DNA of 33,014 nucleotides from positions 1 to 33,014 of the forward strand of contig FLMG01001247.1 in assembly GCA_900088475.1 (NCBI GenBank). Direction: 5' to 3'. How positions within the stretch are numbered: position 1 is the first letter of the stretch; every line of letters begins with the position of its first letter. Below, piece after piece: positions 1,941 through 32,266 of this stretch. Under the pieces are notes generated by a model that worked only from the letters and a program-made list of their open reading frames with translations, had not been told where the DNA came from and did no database searches. A program made the translations under genes and the position numbers. This stretch comes from Hyphochytrium catenoides. Its lineage: Eukaryota; Protista; Hyphochytriomycota.

Positions 1941-3510
1941 TCAATAACAGTAGTGTAGTCCTCCGCGCTCAGAGTGACCTTTTTCTTTGAGGAGGATTCT
2001 GTTGAAGGGATCAAGGAGCATTCCAAGTACTTCCGCTTCACACTGCTGGAAGAGTTCATCAGAATACTCGGAGAGTATTGCCCTGTGTTGCTCCCCTGCA
2101 ACTGGTGCTGATAAGGATGATGTTTGAACCTTGAGAAGTTTGTCTATTAGCTCTTGCCGCAAGCTCATGCTGATGTTGATCTGTGTCAATGACCCAGGGC
2201 TCAGAAAATTCTCCAAGATTGTTGCTGCATGTGTTGCCCTCTTATGAGTGTCGCTGGATCTGTAGGCAAATGCCAACCGTAAGAAGAGAACATTTTCAAC
2301 GCAAAATTCTTTCATAGCGTAGGTCTGGAAGCGCTGCAGAACGTCTGGCTTCTTAAAAAAGACATTCTTTAGCTCCAAAGGGGTCTTCACCGGCTTAAGG
2401 ATAAATTGCATGTCCCCTTCCTTTCTGCGACTTTTATCACTAGTTGCCATTGACCCATTCACTATTCGAAGGCGGCGTTTCTCCTCGACGTAGGAAAGCC
2501 AGATGGGCCTGAAACCGCAGAAGATAGGGTAGCTAAGAAAGCCTATGGCAATGCCGTACTGTCGCAGAAAGGGCTCTGAGCCTCCCACAGTGTACGCTAG
2601 AGCCGCACCCACGATACTGGTCACCAAGAGTGTCAGCGCGAAGTTTTTAAACTGGTCTTTGAAATGGAAGGCCTCTTCTACTTTTCTCAGCTTGAACGCC
2701 CCTAGAAGTATGGCAAACGTCGCGAAGATTGGTCCTGCTGAACTCAAGCTTCTCTGTAGTAGCAGCAACAGGGAGGGATGAAGGTATGTAATAAGGTCGG
2801 TCAAGATCACATAAGAGAACTAGCTTGTAATGTAATAAGTGATCAGCACAGCCGACAACAGGATGCGGAAGCGACTGAAACCTGGCAAGGGTGAGGCAGC
2901 AAAATGGACAAGACAATTGGAAGGCGGTGAAGACCATGTACGCTGCCACTCTCTAGTCCCATACCTGGACGCTGCCATTTGATCTACAGTCGACAGGGTT
3001 GTAGTGTCCAAGGCTATAGTCGTGCAGGTAGCCGATGTTGAGCATAAAGTTGAGGAGAACTAATACGAGAAACACAGCAACTGTCAAGGGAAGATGCAGC
3101 TTCTTCTTTGCCCATCGCGATCGAAAGACGTTCACGGCACATCCTTGGAGGTATGAACTGAACCACACGTAGAAGAATTGTGCCGTCAGACTGGCAAGGG
3201 CGAAAGGCGAAAGAGTTACTCCAGCCAAATACATCTCGCACTTGATGGCGATAGGGAATATGTAGTCCTGGAAGTTGTACAGCATCCCGATAAAAAAGGC
3301 TAGTTGTCCCACAACAACCCAAGCCAAGGGCAGACATGTCAGTGGATACAGCATCCGTCTCTTCCACCAGAGAAGCAGCACAACAACTTGCATTGCTGCC
3401 ATCAAAGTGACAAGCGGAACGGCTGCAATCAATTCTGATGATGAAGACTCAGATCCAGACCCATCATCATCCTGATGAGGAGAAGAGGAGGCCGCTGAAG
3501 GCGCTTCCAT
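1941..3510 (-). CDS. Seven-transmembrane protein with C-terminal RGS domain (7TM-RGS)
   Basis: Exons 3510 (or 3546)-2965 and 2753-1941, joined by a phase-0 intron CAG|GTATGG...CTACAG|AGA. There are seven hydrophobic helices. The RGS box reads LQRFQTYAMKEFCVENVLFL...ILENFLSPGSLTQINIS...LFQQCEAEVLGMLLDPFNR. The true stop may be at 1769 (see findings). Confidence 0.88.
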
Positions 3511-8997: not shown

Positions 8998-9098
8998 ATT
9001 CCGGTGGCAATTCTCTGCGGCAGGGTCAGCACGAATCGCCGACTAAATCAAGCGAGAGCAGAGAGTGAGGACTTTTGCTGCAGGGAACTCAAGCAGGG

Positions 9099-10410
9099 AT
9101 GTACTTCCTGCTAGGCACAGAGCTGTCCTACTATACAGGCAAAGCGAGAGCCTTTCTCCGATATAAGGGAGTCGAATTTCAGGAGGTTCTTGGCAGATCT
9201 CAGATCTACAAAGACTTCATCATTCCAGAGACGGGAGTCTCCTTTGTTCCCGTACTTGTTGCTCCTAAGACAGATGGGATTAAAGTTCCTACTTCAGAGA
9301 GCTTTCAATGCATTCAAGACTCTACAGATATCATAGATTTCATAGAGCAACGACATCCAGAGCCTCAAGTGATCCCCACCTCCCCAAAGCAAAGGTTTGT
9401 CAGTCTGCTTCTGGAGTTCTGGGCTGACCAGTGGCTTGTCATACCGGGAATGCACTTCCGATGGAACTTTGACGAGAATCTCCCATATATATACTACGAG
9501 TTCGGGCGTTCTTCAACAGGCTCAAAGGTGGCCAAGGAATGCGTAGAAGTTGGGAGGAAAGTGTGCAAGCAGTTTCAAAACTCTATGGCCTTCCTGGGCA
9601 TCTCAGAGACCACTGGTCCAGTAATAGAAGAACAGTTTTATCAGCTTCTTGAGGACCTTGCCACGCATCTGTCCCAGCACTCCTACCTACTTGGAGAAAC
9701 ACCCTCGTTGGCGGACTTTGCTCTTATGGGTCCACTGTATGCACACGGATTACGAGATCCCAGAACCAGCGTCATCATTAAGACTCGAGCCCCTTCCGTC
9801 GCAGATTATATCGAGCGGGTAATGCAGTTAGTGGACGCAAGAGATCCACCCCATGCTCTTTCTCGACATGAGCCAAACAAGCCTCTCTTCATCCGTCAGC
9901 GACCTCTGGGGTCTAAGGGTTGGATGCCCGGTGATGGAATACCCGATACTTTGACGCCTTTCCTGAAGACGATATTTCGTGACTTTTTGCCGTTCGTATC
10001 AGCGACGGCCCGAGAGGTAAGCTATAATTCAATATCAGCTCCCGTCAGAGAGTCTCTTATGCACGCTTTCCCACTCCCTTCAGGTAACTCGTTACCTAAA
10101 AGAGAACCCATCGCAGTCTACCCTTCCCCGAGCTGTCGGTTTTCACAGCTTCTCCCTGGATGGGGTAGAAGATGCCAGAGCAGTGCTGCCCTACGATCTC
10201 TGGATGTATCAGAGGTGCCATGATTTTCGAGCTGCCCTTAGCGAAGTGGATAGAAGCGATCTGGATTATTGGCTATGCCAGAAAGTTTGTCAAGACGCAA
10301 TCCACACCTTGGATAGCATTGACCTTTCGCACTGCCGAGTGCGAAAGATTGGAAACCTAATGGGAGTGGAGGACCATTCGACGATGGAAATGAGCAGGGC
10401 ACGATTGTGA
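9099..10410 (+). CDS. Glutathione S-transferase-family protein, long bacterial type, with C-terminal PTS1 (ARL)
   Basis: Exons 9099-10016 and 10084-10410. Motifs: SYYTGKARAFLRYKG, VPVL, QDSTDII, YLLGETPSLADFALMGPLYAH. Ends SRARL-stop. Confidence 0.9.
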
Positions 10411-21657: not shown

Positions 21658-22079
21658 TTGTAGTAGTAAGTAGCCCTTATTTTCTAGTTGTACATAATAT
21701 TCGGAGGTAATAATACGCATTGAAGCGGCCCCCCTCACTCTTGCCTTGGTTTTATCACTACCTTCTCCCACCCACTCCTATACTGATATCCCTCCCAGGA
21801 AAATATGAAGGCAGACATTTATTTGGTAGAACACACACAAGTAGACAGAGGTGGAAAAGACTTTTCCCCAACTAGCCCCACTTTGCTATCTCATACACTT
21901 GCATGACGTATCTCGTATCCCCAATTATGCTTATCTCAAAGTTCAGATACTTTGTGGTGTTGAACCATTCATGGCCTCCTCTTTCTCCCCATATGATCTC
22001 TCGCATTTTCTATTTTCTCGCTCTGTCTGGTGTGCCTTACTCAAGTTTCCTGCTTCCGCCACTTTCAAGTTTTGTCTGA

Positions 22080-22117
22080 GCAGCAGCGAGCAAGAGCAGC
22101 AGCAACAGCAGCAGCAG
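22080..22117 (+). repeat. Imperfect CAG/CAA trinucleotide run
   Basis: gcagcagcgagcaagagcagcagcaacagcagcagcag. Confidence 0.8.
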
Positions 22118-22914
22118 GGAAAGCAAGAGGTCAGGCTCCACTCCTCAGATCAGCAGCTCACTCTGTCTGTCTGTCCACCCAATCCCTGCTCTCGCCCTAC
22201 TGTTGTCTGCTTTTCACCTGCATCGCCAGGAAATCAGGGACAAACGACAGAAGAAGTTGGCTCCTTTCACTCTTTTCTTACTTGTCAAATAGCCCAAGTC
22301 TGAGGCTCACTCCACACTAGTAATTCACCGTCTTCTTCTTCTTCTGTGTTGCTCTTTCAACGTGCATGGCCTTTCTTTGCCAAGGTTGAACAGAGTGCGG
22401 TTTCTCCTCTTCCTGACGCTTAGCCTTCCTCTATTCATTAGGGAACAGTGGCGGTAGTAGGTTCCATAGGGGTGGACGGTAGCCATCATCTTGCGTCTGA
22501 AGGTCTTTTCATCCTTAGCAGAGCAATTTCTTGGTGCTTCGACTGTTAACCAGGTGCATATACTCCTCTTTCCAAGCGTCAACTTTGCGAAAGTAAGTGC
22601 TGCTTGGAGCTCGATTAGTACTAATAAGAGGGGACACAAGTGTCAGCCGCGCCCCATCTCTCCTATTCTGGCCCCGATAATGTCGATGTTCGTCACTGAC
22701 CATATTGTTTCTGCTACTGCTGCTGGTGCACCTCACACACTTCACTCTAGGGGCAACTAAAAAGGCCCTCCTCTTAACCATCAGCTGGACAATGCTACTG
22801 GACAACCGGGTGTCGGTGTCCTAGCAGTGAGGGTGTTTGTCATGGTTGCTGTCTGCCTGCTGATCAAGGGGAAAGATAATCTCTATTTAGACCGTGGTGG
22901 GTAGACAGAAGAAA

Positions 22915-25622
22915 ATGGCGAGAAGGCTGTCGAGAAATAAGGACAAGGATGGCCTTTCAGCGGGTGACGGCAAGCACGAGACGAACCAGGATAAGTCACG
23001 CTGGATTGGCACTCCTTACCACAAGATGAAGGCACAGGCCTTCTATCAGGAACTCATGATAGGAGGCGAGGTTTTTGCCCAAGGTGATTGCGTCCTCGTC
23101 CTCTCTGATGACCCTGCTACTCCCTATGTGGCAAGGATTGAGCGTCTCTTTGAGGACGTTAGACATGAAAAAAAGTTTCGCGGCCGCTGGTTCTTCAGAA
23201 AGCAAGACGATTCAGCGCTAAAGCACAAGACCAACGTGCTTGAAAACGAGCTGTTCCTCTCGGATTGCACTGATGTCAATTCTATAGACAGTATCATCAA
23301 GAAATGCACAGTGGTCTATCAGAGCCCGGAACTAGGATCCAACAAAAGGGAAGTGCTAAAGAACCGGAAGGATAAGTTTATATGTAGGTATTTCTTCAAA
23401 CCCCAGACGAAGGGCAAGCTTCTTCCGCTTACGCCCGAGTGGCTACAGACTCCTCCGCCACCAAAAGTAGATCAACCCCTGCCTGAACATATAGAGCCCT
23501 CTCGCGCCTCTCCAGTTGATGCTCAGGAAGGAAATTTGAGAGTAGGGGACAGCTCGCAGTCGAGCCGAAGACCCGGACGGTCTGTTCTCACGGAAGAGAG
23601 CATGTCCAAAGCCTCAGCTAGGATTCCAGCCGTCTCTGGTCCTTCTCCAAAGCAAGGGCCTGCTGTAGGAGAAAAAAGGAAGGCTCAGTCTCTTCCTGAC
23701 TCGCAACAGAGACTTGATATCAAAGGTAAAAGCGCAAGTGAATCCAGAGCCATCAGTACACCTTCCGCCGATGCTGCAAAAAAGGCACGGTTCACATCTC
23801 ATCCATCTACGGCAAGTAGTAGTAGTAAGCAAGACTCCACAAAGAAAGCTTCTGGAGCAACTGAGAAAAGGCCAAAAGCAATTCCTGCAACTATCCAGCA
23901 GCCAATCTCTGTTCCTCCAGTTCCAGAACGCAATGCGGCTGCTGAAGGCCAAGGACAGCAGAAGAGCTCCAACACAACCAGCACTTCTAATGGCAGTGAC
24001 AGACCATCAGGCGCAGCCTCTGCGTCAAAGGACACATCATCGGAGCACACACTTTCCATTGCAGCGCCCCGAGGAGCTCTTAACATCGAGCCCTCCGTCT
24101 CCTCCCCGCCATTGTCACCGCGCCTTTGGGTAAGAAAGGAGGAGGAGGAGGTAGCTCCTGAGGTGACCCAACCTACTAGGAGCAAGCGTGCTTCTACCAG
24201 TGCCAGCACAAAGTCAAGCTACAATCTGCTGCAACAGAGACATCTGGAAGCGGAGCAGGAGCCTGTTCCAGAAACTCGAATCGGCCCGGATTATCAAGCT
24301 GAACTGCCCAGCCTGCTTCCTACGAAACCTAAGCCGCCCACCGGGAAAGATCTTTCACTGATTTGGTCTGCAGAAGAAGGAGAGAAGCTGTCTCCATCTG
24401 AGAATGTTAGTCGATACCTGCACGCTGCAGGCCTTAGGCGGAAATTTCTTGAAGGGCAATATGTTTGGGGTGTCTTCAACGGAGAAGAGACAGGAACTGG
24501 CATTGTCACCGCAATCAGGAGTGAAGGTTCGAGCGTCAAATTAACAATCAAGTCGATGTACCCCGTCTTTGGTCGCCTCTATGGAGAGATTGACTCAAGT
24601 CAAGTCGCAAGGACCTTACCTGAGGTTGAGGCATTGGAGTTCCTGCACACTCGGGGCTATGATATCTCCAAGGCCTTGGCTGAGCTCCCACCAGACATTC
24701 TGGACAACTCTAAGGAGCTTCAGATTAACCTTCTAAGGTGCTTATCCCAGCAATTCGTCCTTCAGGGGCAGCTCGCTCTCTTACAGCCTGGCTCGCTCTT
24801 CATCCATCTCCTCTAGCTTCGTACTACTCGCTGCACATGGTGTTCAAATACAGTCTTTGACCTTCCTTTCAGCCTTGCCATCGGTACAAACGAGGTTGTT
24901 ATGTAGGACTAGCGACTCTCATCTCGTCTATTTCTGACTCCTCATTCCACTCTGATTGACCCTTGATGTCACGCTATGTTGCGCAGAACGAAAAAGAAGC
25001 CAGTAGAGGGTGACATTATCGGTTTGAAAGGCATGGACCAAGGAGCGCCGAGATCACAAAAGAGGAGACGTCCTGAGTCTTCTGGCAGCTCAGGCTCAAG
25101 AAGGGAGCCACGAAGCAGGGTCCCCACGCCAGTTAGAGAGGCACCGCCCAGTGAGGTGGTCCCTCACCATGTTAGAAGTCCAGTTAAACCCACTCCCACG
25201 GTTGTTGAAACAAATTATGCTAAGGATCCAAGGTAGAGAAGTGCCTGCTCTAGTAGATGAGATGTCACACGTTACTCACGCAGGTGACCTGTTACGTCCT
25301 TACAGCGTCGATGATGGATCTACAGATGTAGCAAAGCAGTATCTGAACCGGTAAGGATCCTTAACTCTAGTGCCCGGACAATACCGCCCCGCTCGTCCTG
25401 CCTTGATGCTAAATCTCTGTTCTTTGTCCTCCTAACAGTGTCAAGAAGAGACTGGGAGACCATCGGTTCCTGTACAAGCAGTTCCTTTATACATTGAGAG
25501 ACTTCGACAACGGGATTTTGACCTTAGAGCTCTTATTTCTGAGAGTGCGTCGGCTCTTGGATGACTATGACGACCTTCTTTTGGAGTTCCAAGAATTCTT
25601 CCCCTCGCCAACAGCTGTGTAG
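22915..25622 (+). CDS. BAH-ELM2-PAH domain chromatin protein
   Basis: Exons 22915-24737, 24987-25232, 25306-25350 and 25439-25622, all GT-AG and in frame. BAH: GDCVLV...PYVARIERLFED...RWF...NELFLSD..D.NSIDSIIKKCTV...FICRYFF. ELM2: ETRIGPDYQAELP...LIWS...EALEFLHTRGYDISKALAEL. PAH: AKQYLNRVKKRL...YKQFLYTLRDF...RVRRLLDDYDDLLLEFQEFFP. Further 5' exons are possible (in-frame acceptor at 22890). Confidence 0.88.
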
Positions 25623-28717: not shown

Positions 28718-29449
28718 CTACCGGTAGGCAGGGTCGTTGTGTACAGATACATCTAGACATTTGCTGAGAATTTCATAGTCTGCCGTATCATCTCCGCACC
28801 GACTTGGGGAGCTTTCGTCGATCTCATAGGCTAGCTTGTCTTTGTAGAAAGACAGAGCAGCCACGTTAGCCTTGAAGACAGTCAATAGGAGAAACTTCAT
28901 TCCTAGAGCACGACCAATCCTCTCCGTACAGCTCATCAGCCATGACCCTAGCCCGCTACCTCTCCATCTCTGTCCTACCTGGATCTCATAGAGATATAGA
29001 ACTTCATACTGGTTCTCCACGAGGAAGCGGAAGTGCACAAAGGCAGCTAAGCCCGTGCTTGCGCTTGCTTCTTCTCCGGTTTCTTCTGTCAAGCCGTGAA
29101 CGAGCAAGTAACGAGCATCTGTATGGAAGAGCTCCTTGGTCTTTGCATGGATGTCCCAGCCCCATTGGCTGTGAACGTAGAAGTCTTTCATATTCGCTGT
29201 GAACAGGTCGACAATTGCGCCTCTTTCCTCTGCACTCAGTGCGTTGGCGGTTTTGAAGCTGAGTTGTAGAGTGTCCCCAGGAAGCGTCCTGCAGAGGTTC
29301 TTCCACTCGTCAGGGCAGATGGCAGACATCTGCAACGGGTCAGCCACCGCCGCCGCTACCTTCACGCGGTTCTCTTTCACCTTCTGCAGCGCCGCGGATC
29401 GCCCTGCACTAATGCCTGGACCAGGCCGTTTCTTCCTTGATCGTGGCAT
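28718..29449 (-). CDS. NAA40: N-alpha-acetyltransferase 40 (NatD), intronless
   Basis: NMKDFY..SQWGWD...K.KEL...ARYLLV; AFVHFRF...VLYLYEIQV...RGSGLG..LM; LTVFKANVAALSFY...IDESSP...YEILSK. Confidence 0.92.
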   Translation of the reverse strand: MPRSRKKRPGPGISAGRSAALQKVKENRVKVAAAVADPLQMSAICPDEWKNLCRTLPGDTLQLSFKTANALSAEERGAIVDLFTANMKDFYVHSQWGWDIHAKTKELFHTDARYLLVHGLTEETGEEASASTGLAAFVHFRFLVENQYEVLYLYEIQVGQRWRGSGLGSWLMSCTERIGRALGMKFLLLTVFKANVAALSFYKDKLAYEIDESSPSRCGDDTADYEILSKCLDVSVHNDPAYR

Positions 29450-29480
29450 GGCTTCAGGGTTGGTTCTGCTTCTTACTTTA

Positions 29481-29528
29481 TATTCAACGCATGCGAAGCT
29501 CTGGTATTCAACGCATGCGAAGCTCTGG
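29481..29528. repeat. 24-bp perfect tandem duplication (TATTCAACGCATGCGAAGCTCTGG)2
   Basis: Two identical copies about 30 nt upstream of the NAA40 ATG. Confidence 0.95.
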
Positions 29529-29985
29529 ACACGTTGGACTCTGGCGTTGGACTGCGACAATCGATCAATCTCCGTCTCTATAATCTGCTGGTGCGCCGGT
29601 AGATCAGCGGAGTATCCTTCTTAGGAGTGTGTGTCTTTATTCTGGTGAATGTAGTCCCGAATGTAATACTTTCGGATGCCGAAGTCATCAGAATCTCTAG
29701 AGAAAGATATCTCTGTGAACTCTCTCTCTGTGTATTTCATAAGGGTTCTGATTCTCTGTCTTTGGTCACCGCATCAACCGATGTGGATCTTCCACGCTCT
29801 GTTGCAAGCTGACCCTGCCCCGCTCGTCACTTCAAGTCAGAGGAAGAGACTCAGGTTAGGACGGGGACCGTACGTAGAGAGTGAAAGAGAAAGAGACACC
29901 GGGAGAGCAAGCAGACGGAGAAGGGCATAGAAGGGGACACACGGTAGTGAAGGGTGAGCAAGAGAGGCGGCGATCTGAGAGCGTC

Positions 29986-32266
29986 ATGGAGACAGACCTT
30001 GACAGAGTGAGGCGATGGATTGCAGATGGCGTCCTGTTTCACCCGCTGGATGCAGAGCATGTGAACTCCGTGGACTTGTCCAGGGTACGCCATCTCGTGC
30101 ATTATCAGCTCATGATCCTTATTTCTGCTTCTCCCTTTCCTCATCTCTCCTATACCCTGACCTATATCCCTCACTGCCGGTGACCTTGGCCAAACGGTTT
30201 CTTTGTTGCTGAAGAGTGGAGGGCACTTATTGCCTCTGTCGCATCATTGCTCCTCTCCCTACTTTAGGCAATTGGGCTCTGTAATGGAGTGCCTTTCACT
30301 GCTGAGGAGAGGGAGAATCCACGTTTTTCTAAGGTTCAGGAGCTTCACGACCTTATAGTTCGAGAGGAAGTAACAGGAGGAGCATTGGAGAGCAACGACC
30401 GTGCAGGTTATTATCCTAGTGGACCCCTACTCCTATACCTTTTTCTCTTCAGCTGCTTGATCTATTCCTTTCTACTTTCCTTGCCGCCTCGAATGCCTAC
30501 GTGCTCGTTCATCTGGCTACTCTTGCACACTTGTTAGCCTGTCTCTGTGTATATGTCTTTTGCTGGTATGCTTCTCTCGGGGGAGTGTCTTTCCCTTAGT
30601 GCTCACATCTTCTCTATTTTACCTTTCAACCCTCGTGTGTCTCCAACCCTCAATCTCGCAATTGCACTTCCCCGGACACGACTCCCTCTTTATGCCTTTG
30701 CCCTCTTTCCTATTCCCTTGGTTGCCGAATGTAGAGGGCGGGGCTGAGCCGCTTGACTTAGCGCTGTTGGTCTTGGACGGTCTGGGAATGAATATACTTG
30801 AGAAGTTTCTTCCTCCCACTTCATTCCTCCGCCGCCATCTGGTTCGCCCTATCCGCTCCGTGATGCCGTCAACCACTGCAGCGGCACTGTCGTCTCTCAA
30901 CACTGGCTTCTATCCTTCTCAGCACGGAGTGATAGGTTGGACAATCTCAGTCTCTCCTTCCCACTCCTCGGAACGATCAAAGCGGGAGAGAATCGATCCT
31001 CTTCCCTGGTACAACGCCACCACGGACCAGCCTCTCTCTCCTGAGAATGTGGATCCAGCCAAAGTATTCTTTGCGCGGCCTACAATCAAAGAGCGATGGG
31101 TGGGAGTGGACACGTGGGTCGTGCATGCCTATGCAGGTAGTCCCTTCAGTAACTACATCACTTCGGCGCAGTGTGTGCCGGAGAAAGCACCGCGGGCAAG
31201 CCAGGAGAGACTTAAAGGGCCATCAGTTCTTGCCGAGTCTCCGTCACCTCTTATCATTCCGTGCAGCACGCTGCCTGCCTCCTCTCTGGAGGAGGCCCTT
31301 GCCCAGTTGCTGACAATATGGGAGCAGTCAGTGGCACAAACTAAAAGTGAGGAGACGGGGAAGGGACAGAGCTCTGATACGCAGTCTTGCACTCCGTCCC
31401 GCGTGCGCTCTTATACTTATGTATATGTCTCTGACCCAGACGCCACCGAGCACCGGTGTGGAGTCTTCGCCGAAGAAGTCCGTCATATTTTAGAGCACTT
31501 TGACCGTGTCTTAGAGAAATTTTGGACGGAGCGCTTGGCTCCTCTAAGGGAGATAGAAGGAGGGAGGCAGAGGCTCATTATCACTGCGGATCATGGCCAA
31601 GTGGACGCTCACCCCATTCTGGACCTTCATCCGAAAGTGAATGAGCTCTTACTCTTCCCTCCGACTGTTGAGAGCCGCACTCCATGCTTCCACGTCCAGC
31701 CAGGCAAGGGTGAGGAGTTCGCTAAGAGATTTAGAGAGATTTACGGTAAGCATTCCAGGACAAACATGATCAGTTGTCTTAGGACCCATGGGAACGCTTT
31801 CCCCTCTCTCTGCGGTCAACCACTCTTCCCTGCTTATATGACTACCGTCTCTCTGCTCTTTCACACAACCCTTCTGCATGCCCACTTTTGCATAGACAGC
31901 GATGGTGTCTTTCCTTGCCCAGCAGCAATGGTTGTCACTCCGCTTGGGCCATAACTCTTCATCTCTCCAGGGTCTAGTCCTTCTCTTGCCTCATTTACCT
32001 CTTGTCGAAATGGAAGGTGATCTATACTAAGCCGCCCTCACACAGGGGATCACTATGCTCTCCTTACTGCTGCGGAGGCAGAGCAGTTGGAGCTGTTTGG
32101 TCCTTCTCCTTGGCACCCAGAGGCACGGGCTAGGACAGGAGACTTCGTGGCCCTCTCTTCGTCTCATTCTGTACTCAACTGGTTTCGTGGTGAATATCCC
32201 CTAAAAGGGTGCCACGGCGGGATGACGAGAGCGGAGGTGGAGGTCCCTTTGATAGTCTTGAGATAA
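29986..32266 (+). CDS. Alkaline phosphatase superfamily enzyme (type I phosphodiesterase/nucleotide pyrophosphatase-like, prokaryotic type)
   Basis: Exons 29986-30084, 30268-30406, 30735-31745 and 32046-32266. Metal and nucleophile motifs: LVLDGLG, SVMPSTTAAAL...TG.YPSQHG..GW, DPDATEH, ITADHG, RTGDFV, GCHGGMT..E..VPL. Confidence 0.9.

What the first reader, a model, noticed from the sequence alone, without database searches (positions are those of the whole stretch)
22915..25622. Hybrid corepressor scaffold: MTA-like BAH-ELM2 joined to a Sin3-type PAH domain instead of SANT
Seen: after removing three GT-AG introns, one frame encodes BAH, a long S/P/K-rich linker, ELM2 and a complete C-terminal PAH domain. 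The ORF track misses the PAH because an intron splits it. Known: BAH-ELM2-SANT defines MTA/RERE proteins, where ELM2-SANT recruits class I HDACs, while PAH domains are the repressor-docking modules of Sin3. I see no SANT here. Inference: one polypeptide may combine chromatin reading, HDAC binding and transcription-factor docking, i.e. the core of a lineage-specific NuRD/Sin3 chimeric complex. I do not recall this architecture being described.
Basis: partly seen in the sequence, partly recalled or inferred. Interest (0 to 1): 0.72.

Follow-up and report, generated by a model that had tools for sequence, protein, structure and literature searches.

The report
MTA-like HDAC scaffold with PAH tail
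This protist gene very probably encodes one chromatin protein with a nucleosome-reading BAH domain, an HDAC-binding ELM2 motif and a Sin3-type PAH docking domain. It belongs to an undescribed protist family that normally also has a SANT domain, which this copy has lost.

Summary
A four-exon GT-AG model (22915-24737, 24987-25232, 25306-25350, 25439-25622) closes in frame. Pfam finds BAH, ELM2 and PAH above their curated cut-offs, and no SANT exists anywhere in the window, introns included.

PAH does not replace SANT, and the design is not a one-lineage invention. At least four unnamed protist or environmental relatives (L011, L019, P0039, P0096) carry BAH, ELM2 (motif not detected in L019), SANT and a C-terminal PAH together. 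L011 is the closest BAH relative. It shares the window's 40-45 nt mini-exon and the phase-2 intron in the codon just before the conserved start of the last PAH exon, which supports both the gene model and common descent.

Named oomycete proteins with the same BAH-ELM2 layout (Albugo, Aphanomyces) lack both SANT and PAH. The window gene is intermediate: SANT lost, PAH kept. A normal Sin3 gene sits elsewhere in the genome.

The likely function is a class I HDAC scaffold. BAH would read chromatin, ELM2 would hold the deacetylase, and PAH would dock repressor helices. The SANT-borne inositol-phosphate switch would be missing.

No RNA data could be obtained, so the exon 1-2 join is inferred. I found no paper describing this family.

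The parts
22915..24737 (+). Exon 1 (607 codons plus 2 nt). It starts at the first ATG and ends at donor AAG|GTGCTT.
   Evidence: The first residues resemble the N-terminus of relative P0053.
23074..23421 (+). BAH domain (residues 54-169). It is preceded by a short extension (W-I-G, then Y-Y/F-Y) shared with the closest relatives.
   Evidence: Pfam E 4.4e-23. Best solved relatives are the BAH domains of DNMT1, PBRM1, EBS, BAHCC1 and SHL, E 1e-12 to 1e-10. Subfamily alignment.
23485..24234 (+). S/P/K-rich low-complexity linker of about 250 residues.
   Evidence: Translation. No Pfam match and no homologue.
24277..24429 (+). ELM2-specific motif (R-I-G-P-D-Y-Q-A...), residues 455-505.
   Evidence: Pfam E 3.8e-6, 28.1 bits. 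The own-genome scan places it at 24277-24429.
24436..24594 (+). Beta-rich unit (five predicted strands) between the ELM2 motif and the C-terminal helices. It looks like an SH3/KOW/Tudor-like barrel.
   Evidence: AF2 secondary structure, low confidence, pLDDT 53. Weak match to an Spt5 KOW region, E 0.07. An equivalent insert appears in P0093, P0096 and the oomycete proteins.
24622..24737 (+). Helical end of the ELM2 region (the conserved 'Y-D' helix), then a short helix at the place where relatives begin their SANT. The SANT itself is absent.
   Evidence: Alignment. Weak, non-significant match to MTA1 ELM2 in 4bkx_A, E 0.75. SANT profile negative.
24738..24986 (+). Intron 1 (249 nt, GT..AG). 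It holds the in-frame stop at 24814-24816 that ends the unspliced ORF.
   Evidence: No coding remnant of SANT in any frame.
24987..25232 (+). Exon 2: a basic, S/P-rich linker with an NLS-like K/R run.
   Evidence: L011 has a comparable basic linker exon before its PAH.
25233..25305 (+). Intron 2 (73 nt, GT..AG).
25306..25350 (+). Exon 3: a 45-nt mini-exon encoding the first PAH helix.
   Evidence: L011 has a 40-nt mini-exon at the same place.
25351..25438 (+). Intron 3 (88 nt, phase 2). It splits the PAH in the codon directly before V-K-K-R-L-G-D.
   Evidence: L011 has a phase-2 intron in the codon directly before I-K-K-K-L-G-D.
25439..25622 (+). Exon 4: the rest of the PAH domain (Pfam match at 25473-25601) and the stop codon.
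   Evidence: Pfam E 4.4e-8. Own-genome PAH scan. PDB Sin3/Pst1 PAH matches.

Best explanation
A single-copy, four-exon gene encodes a protein of about 765 residues. Its order is BAH, a long disordered linker, an ELM2 motif with an embedded beta-rich unit and a helical end, a basic linker, and a C-terminal PAH domain. It is a derived member of an undescribed protist family of MTA-like class I HDAC scaffolds, whose fuller form is BAH-ELM2-SANT-(zinc finger)-PAH. This copy has lost the SANT domain; named oomycete proteins of the same BAH-ELM2 layout also lack it, and they lack the PAH too. The inferred mechanism has three parts. BAH binds nucleosomes or histone tails. The ELM2 motif binds the surface groove of a class I HDAC and so tethers the enzyme. 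The PAH four-helix bundle docks an amphipathic helix of a DNA-binding repressor or another subunit. Without SANT the protein cannot form the inositol-phosphate pocket that activates HDAC1/3 in animal complexes. The bound deacetylase would then be inositol-phosphate-independent, weakly active, or regulated another way. Shown here: the domain content, the absence of SANT, the family relationship and the shared intron. Inferred: that the exons are joined in mRNA, and all binding functions.
For: Domains are above Pfam cut-offs. The PAH matches solved Sin3 PAH domains. The frame closes through three GT-AG introns.

L011 holds the best BAH hit of 1.84 billion representatives. It encodes BAH, the ELM2 motif, SANT (Pfam Myb E 3e-6), a linker, a 40-nt mini-exon and a split PAH. 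Its phase-2 intron lies in the codon just before the conserved start of the next PAH exon, as in the window.

In L019 the SANT and the first three PAH helices lie in one uninterrupted ORF. P0039 is a continuous 578-aa ORF on transcript-sized contigs of about 2 kb, with BAH, SANT and PAH (Pfam E 1e-5). P0096 carries BAH, ELM2, Myb/SANT, a RanBP zinc finger and PAH (22.1 bits on the fragment).

Oomycete proteins with the same BAH-ELM2 layout (Albugo candida, Aphanomyces euteiches, P0074, P0143) lack SANT and PAH, and neighbouring genes leave little or no room for more exons. The window gene is single copy in its genome. The genome has many HDAC loci and a separate canonical Sin3. PMC3710971 reports that the ELM2 domain alone suffices to bind HDAC1 and that SANT forms the inositol-phosphate pocket.
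Against: There is no transcript evidence: no RNA run was listed. Intron 1 is three times longer than the other two and has a weaker donor (GTGCTT). An in-frame stop follows 26 codons after that donor, and an ATG at 24976 lies in frame with exon 2. Oomycete proteins with the same layout end at about the point where exon 1 ends. A split into two genes is therefore conceivable.

The L011 and L019 PAH pieces are not seen by Pfam on their own. They are linked to the window PAH only by pairwise BLAST (E 2e-5) and a small home-made profile. The ELM2-region model is poor, pLDDT 53. No HDAC or peptide binding was tested.
Confidence: 0.72

Rival explanations
1. There are two genes. A BAH-ELM2 protein of the oomycete type ends at the stop at 24814-24816. 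A separate small basic protein with a single PAH starts at the ATG at 24976 and uses only introns 2 and 3. This would be a gene fission of the ancestral scaffold.
For: The unspliced ORF ends at 24816. ORF 24976-25236 begins with an ATG in the exon 2 frame. Oomycete proteins stop shortly after the equivalent helix. Intron 1 is atypically long with a weaker donor.
Against: The stop and the ATG are only 160 nt apart on the same strand. The in-frame GT-AG join exists. Exons 2-4 mirror the linker, mini-exon and PAH exons that follow SANT within one gene in L011, and within one ORF in L019. P0039 and P0096 have BAH and PAH in one polypeptide.
Confidence: 0.15
2. The gene is one unit but is decaying. 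After losing SANT it no longer recruits an active HDAC. It acts only as a BAH/PAH adaptor, as a decoy, or with the genome's catalytically dead class I HDAC.
For: SANT is absent. PMC3710971 shows that SANT is needed for inositol-phosphate activation. An earlier scan note reports a conserved dead class I HDAC in this genome; I did not check it.
Against: All four exons are open and the ELM2 motif is above the Pfam cut-off. SANT-less proteins of this layout are kept in several oomycete genera, which argues for a working SANT-less form. ELM2 alone binds HDAC1.
Confidence: 0.1
3. The missing SANT is an assembly or annotation artefact. The true locus would hold a SANT exon lost in a collapsed or mis-assembled stretch.
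For: The SANT would be expected exactly where the unusually long intron 1 lies.
Against: The sequence has no N run or gap. No frame of the intron, and no part of the 33-kb window, scores with the family SANT profile. The oomycete proteins of the same layout independently lack SANT.
Confidence: 0.03

Closest known systems
Animal MTA1-3 / RERE (BAH-ELM2-SANT corepressors; MTA1:HDAC1 structure 4BKX, PMC3710971)
   Same: Both have an N-terminal BAH followed by the ELM2-specific motif and a helical ELM2 end. The presumed role is the same: a scaffold that tethers a class I HDAC next to a chromatin-reading domain.
   Different: The window protein has no SANT, so no inositol-phosphate pocket. It has no GATA zinc finger or RBBP4-binding tail. 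A 250-residue linker separates BAH from ELM2, whereas MTA has them adjacent. A beta-rich unit sits inside the ELM2 region. A PAH domain sits at the C-terminus.
Sin3 / Pst1 (PAH1-3 plus the HDAC-interaction domain)
   Same: The C-terminal domain is a bona fide PAH. Its best solved matches are Sin3/Pst1 PAH domains, mostly the second PAH.
   Different: It has one PAH rather than three or four, and no Sin3_corepress/HID domain. HDAC contact would go through ELM2 instead. A canonical Sin3 is encoded elsewhere in the genome, on C903.
Unnamed protist family BAH-ELM2-SANT-(Zn)-PAH (L011, L019, P0039, P0096/P0171; all 'hypothetical' or unnamed)
   Same: The BAH subfamily with its N-terminal extension, the ELM2 motif (not detected in L019) and a basic linker are shared. 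The 'Y-D' helix is seen in L011, L019 and P0096. The C-terminal PAH ends the protein in all of them. With L011 the window also shares the mini-exon and the phase-2 intron inside the PAH.
   Different: The window protein lacks the SANT domain and the zinc fingers seen in P0039 and P0096. Sequence identity outside BAH and PAH is very low.
Oomycete 'BAH domain-containing proteins' (Albugo candida A0A024GLG7 / CCI47350.1; Aphanomyces euteiches A0A6G0XBZ3)
   Same: BAH, the ELM2 motif, the beta-rich insert, the 'Y-D' helix and a short following helix are shared, and SANT is absent.
   Different: The oomycete proteins stop there. They have no basic linker and no PAH.

Membership tests
MTA/RERE-type BAH-ELM2-SANT corepressors | N-terminal BAH domain | tested here: met
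   Pfam BAH E 4.4e-23, 81.9 bits against a 30.8 cut-off.
MTA/RERE-type BAH-ELM2-SANT corepressors | ELM2-specific motif | tested here: met
   Pfam ELM2 E 3.8e-6, 28.1 bits against a 21.7 cut-off. Own-genome scan.
MTA/RERE-type BAH-ELM2-SANT corepressors | SANT domain directly after ELM2, forming the inositol-phosphate pocket | tested here: not met
   No Myb/SANT hit in any exon. None in the intron frames. None in the six-frame window with the family SANT profile.
MTA/RERE-type BAH-ELM2-SANT corepressors | GATA-type zinc finger (MTA) or Atrophin region (RERE) | tested here: not met
   No such Pfam family was reported for any exon at E up to 1.
MTA/RERE-type BAH-ELM2-SANT corepressors | Binds HDAC1/2-type class I deacetylase | not testable with these tools
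   Only indirect support: the genome has many HDAC loci, and ELM2 alone binds HDAC1 in PMC3710971.
Sin3 | Three or more PAH repeats | tested here: not met
   There is one PAH in this gene. The three-PAH gene is on C903.
Sin3 | HDAC-interaction domain (Sin3_corepress, PF08295) | tested here: not met
   It is absent from the exons. The only genomic matches are at C903:7591-8063.
PAH domain (PF02671) | Profile match above the curated cut-off and similarity to solved PAH domains | tested here: met
   33.2 bits against a 21.3 cut-off. 8i03_A E 1.2e-4 and other Sin3 chains.
Protist BAH-ELM2-SANT-PAH family (unnamed) | BAH subfamily with the shared N-terminal extension | tested here: met
   The best hit of the exhaustive search is P0001 from L011. 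Alignment A4 has 16 invariant columns.
Protist BAH-ELM2-SANT-PAH family (unnamed) | C-terminal PAH ending the protein, with a phase-2 intron before the conserved start of its last exon | tested here: met
   Window and L011. BLASTP 43% identity, E 2e-5. Family profile hits.
Protist BAH-ELM2-SANT-PAH family (unnamed) | SANT between ELM2 and PAH | tested here: not met
   SANT is present in L011, L019, P0039 and P0096. It is absent here.
Protist BAH-ELM2-SANT-PAH family (unnamed) | All parts on one transcript | not testable with these tools
   No RNA run was listed. The point is inferred from frame closure and from the relatives.

The most novel reading that the evidence does not exclude
Protists, probably stramenopiles and their neighbours, possess an undescribed class of HDAC corepressor scaffold. 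On one polypeptide it unites the MTA-type HDAC-holding module (BAH-ELM2-SANT) with the Sin3-type transcription-factor docking module (PAH). Within the oomycete/hyphochytrid branch the inositol-phosphate-sensing SANT was discarded. This organism would preserve the intermediate form, an HDAC scaffold that is repressor-dockable but blind to inositol phosphate, possibly paired with the genome's catalytically dead HDAC.
Probability: 0.3. Interest if true: 0.7.

Novelty: new variant of a known kind. Interest (0 to 1): 0.5.

Why it matters
In animals and fungi the two main ways of bringing class I HDACs to genes sit on different scaffolds. One is ELM2-SANT proteins such as MTA, CoREST and MIER. The other is Sin3 with its PAH docking domains. 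A conserved protein family that puts an ELM2 module and a PAH domain on one chain shows these modules have been combined in nature. It offers a compact system for asking how transcription-factor docking is coupled to HDAC tethering. The SANT-less forms here and in oomycetes, which include important crop and fish pathogens, are natural tests of whether ELM2 alone can support a working deacetylase complex without inositol-phosphate control. Everything beyond domain content remains inference, so the value is as a well-defined lead and not yet a result.

Tried and rejected
1. SANT remnant hidden in intron 1. One intron frame has a vaguely SANT-like end by eye. However, a profile built from five family SANT domains gave no signal there or anywhere else in the window. 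Rejected.

2. Close orthologues. All of the following found no closer relative than the weak BAH-level hits:
- three word-index searches
- the exhaustive representative search, BAH-level hits only, best E 1.2e-13
- two Atlas look-ups
- two metagenome scans (one search failed for lack of a conserved stretch)
- a search for paralogues in the own genome

3. P0053 and P0093 as further PAH carriers. The P0053 tail looks PAH-like by eye, but neither Pfam nor the second family profile supports it. Both are left as uncertain.

4. Structure of the ELM2 region. The AF2 model with a nine-sequence alignment reached only pLDDT 53. I ran no fold search on it, because low-confidence models give meaningless matches.

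5. Pfam on the L011 and L019 PAH pieces alone gave no match. Their PAH identity rests on similarity to the window PAH.

6. RNA evidence. The look-up of sequencing runs listed nothing, so read laying was never called.

7. The spliced protein was never joined or submitted to any search or fold. All searches were made exon by exon, by reference.

Full report
**The observation**

The region 22915-25622 on the + strand reads as a four-exon gene.
- Exon 1 is 22915-24737, exon 2 is 24987-25232, exon 3 is 25306-25350 and exon 4 is 25439-25622.
- All three introns are GT..AG, with lengths 249, 73 and 88 nt.
- The exons sum to 2298 nt, so the frame closes on the stop at 25620-25622.
- Given the GT and AG positions around intron 1, donor 24738 with acceptor 24986 is the only in-frame join I found between the two ORFs.

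Every search used single exons by reference.

**Domains**

Pfam gave the following.
- Exon 1: BAH at residues 54-169, E 4.4e-23.
- Exon 1: ELM2 at residues 455-505, E 3.8e-6, 28.1 bits against a 21.7 cut-off.
- Exon 4: PAH, E 4.4e-8, 33.2 bits against a 21.3 cut-off.
- Exon 2: a basic S/P-rich linker with no match.

Exon 3 is a 14-codon mini-exon and encodes the first PAH helix. The PAH exon matches solved Sin3/Pst1 PAH domains, mostly the second PAH; the best is 8i03_A at E 1.2e-4. The BAH matches the BAH domains of DNMT1, PBRM1, EBS, BAHCC1 and SHL at E 1e-12 to 1e-10.

SANT is absent. Pfam finds no Myb/SANT hit in any exon. Nothing appears in the three frames of intron 1. A profile built from five family SANT domains gives nothing in a six-frame translation of the whole window.

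**Relatives**

The exhaustive search of 1.84 billion representatives with exon 1 found only BAH-level hits, the best at E 1.2e-13 and 34% identity. No close orthologue is public. Looking inside those hits changed the picture.
- **P0039** (578 aa) is one uninterrupted ORF on contigs of about 2 kb. It has BAH, a degenerate ELM2 motif, SANT, a CXXC-type zinc module and a Pfam-supported C-terminal PAH.
- **P0096** (962 aa, EukProt) has BAH, ELM2, SANT, a RanBP zinc finger and a C-terminal PAH. The PAH scores 22.1 bits on the fragment.
- **L011** is the contig holding the best BAH hit, P0001. It encodes on one strand BAH, an ELM2-motif exon, a SANT exon (Pfam Myb E 3e-6), a basic linker exon, a 40-nt mini-exon and two exons that finish a PAH and the protein.
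- **L019**, from the same BAH subgroup, has SANT, a linker and the first three PAH helices in one continuous ORF.

**Shared gene structure**

In the window, the 45-nt mini-exon ends with two bases of a codon (phase 2). The next exon begins V-K-K-R-L-G-D. In L011, the 40-nt mini-exon also ends in phase 2, and the next exon begins I-K-K-K-L-G-D. The two PAH exons align at 43% identity, E 2e-5.

A shared mini-exon and a shared intron position and phase are hard to explain except by common descent. They also show that the window's small exons 3 and 4 belong to the same kind of gene as in L011, where they follow BAH, ELM2 and SANT.

**The oomycete branch**

Four hits share the window's BAH-ELM2 layout; outside the BAH their sequence similarity to the window protein is not significant. 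They are P0076 (Albugo candida CCI47350.1 / A0A024GLG7), P0119 (Aphanomyces euteiches, A0A6G0XBZ3), P0074 and P0143. They have BAH, the ELM2 motif, a beta-rich insert, the conserved 'Y-D' helix and one further short helix, and then they stop.

Six-frame profile scans of the three genomic loci find neither SANT nor PAH. The next genes begin 80 to 1100 nt downstream.

Earlier scan notes call the window's organism an oomycete relative, perhaps Hyphochytrium catenoides. I did not verify that. The window gene is SANT-less like these oomycete proteins and PAH-bearing like the deeper relatives. The simplest history is an ancestral BAH-ELM2-SANT-PAH scaffold, loss of SANT in the oomycete/hyphochytrid branch, and later loss of PAH in oomycetes.

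**Genome context**

- The gene is single copy in its genome.
- A canonical Sin3 lies on contig C903, with three PAH matches followed by the Sin3_corepress domain. The window protein therefore adds to Sin3 and does not replace it.
- A second ELM2 gene on C2933 carries a PHD finger. Its SANT could not be resolved.
- The genome has more than ten HDAC loci.

**Mechanism (inferred)**

PMC3710971 reports three relevant facts about MTA1.
- The ELM2-specific motif lies in a conserved non-polar groove of HDAC1.
- The ELM2 domain alone is sufficient to bind HDAC1 without inositol phosphate.
- SANT forms the basic inositol-phosphate pocket whose occupation activates the enzyme.

By analogy, the window protein should tether a class I HDAC through ELM2 and read chromatin through BAH. 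It should use its PAH bundle to dock an amphipathic helix of a DNA-binding repressor, as Sin3 PAH domains do (established knowledge of Sin3). It would lack inositol-phosphate control.

From memory, the BAH keeps aromatic residues at positions that form a methyl-lysine cage in EBS-type BAH domains. I did not test this, so it is only a lead.

The beta-rich unit between the ELM2 motif and the helical end is weakly KOW-like (E 0.07), and its model is low-confidence. It replaces part of what is a helical dimerisation domain in MTA1. Its role is unknown.

**Weak points**

- No RNA run was listed, so read laying could not be used.
- The exon 1-2 join is the weakest link. Intron 1 is long, its donor is GTGCTT, a stop follows 26 codons after the donor, and an ATG at 24976 is in frame with exon 2. 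I give a two-gene reading about 15%.
- The L011 and L019 PAH pieces are too short and divergent for Pfam on their own.
- Most relatives are unnamed, so the taxonomic range of the family is unknown.

**Literature and novelty**

Full-text searches for ELM2 with PAH and BAH returned no paper that joins them. The named relatives are annotated only as 'BAH domain-containing protein' or 'hypothetical'.

I rate this a new variant of a known kind. It is an MTA-like ELM2 scaffold belonging to an undescribed PAH-tailed family, in a SANT-less form. It is a good lead for the evolution of chromatin complexes, but it rests on domain architecture alone.

Noticed in passing
window 24436-24594 (+): A unit of about 55 residues, predicted as five beta strands, sits inside the ELM2 region between the HDAC-groove motif and the helical end. 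It is shared with oomycete proteins, P0093 and P0096. It is weakly KOW-like (Spt5, E 0.07), and the P0093 equivalent weakly hits DUF4537. MTA1 has helices at this place.
   Followed up: partly
G000:C2933:5322-8558 (L006, minus strand): The only other ELM2 gene of the genome has the ELM2 motif (E 1.4e-6), a 'Y-D' helix and a PHD finger (E 4e-10). An ORF piece begins with a SANT-like helix-3 ending, but no SANT was detected, perhaps because introns split it.
   Followed up: partly
G000:C903:5426-8063 (L001, L002, L004): A canonical Sin3 gene with three PAH matches followed by the Sin3_corepress HDAC-interaction domain. The organism keeps an ordinary Sin3 beside the PAH-tailed scaffold.
   Followed up: partly
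L015 (Albugo candida CAIX01000166.1), L020 (Aphanomyces euteiches VJMJ01000083.1), L021: Oomycete 'BAH domain-containing proteins' are in fact BAH-ELM2 proteins without SANT. This is a SANT-less ELM2 scaffold class, and its ELM2 part is mostly missed in the precomputed annotation.
   Followed up: yes
L019:8285-9441 (JGI 3300071631 contig): This relative lacks the intron that splits the PAH before the conserved start of the last PAH exon in the window and in L011. It keeps the next intron, after the third helix. Intron gain or loss can therefore be followed within this family.
   Followed up: partly
window 1944-2810 (-), 9075-10220 (+), 28721-29560 (-), 30560-31951 (+): Long ORFs elsewhere in the window match RGS (E 6e-10), glutathione S-transferase (E 4e-8), GNAT acetyltransferase (E 1e-9) and type I phosphodiesterase/nucleotide pyrophosphatase (E 1e-19). 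These are ordinary neighbours with no visible link to the finding.
   Followed up: partly
window 22030-22141 (both strands): A glutamine/CAG-type simple repeat lies about 800 nt upstream of the start codon. It is visible as runs of Q, A or L in the ORF translations.
   Followed up: no
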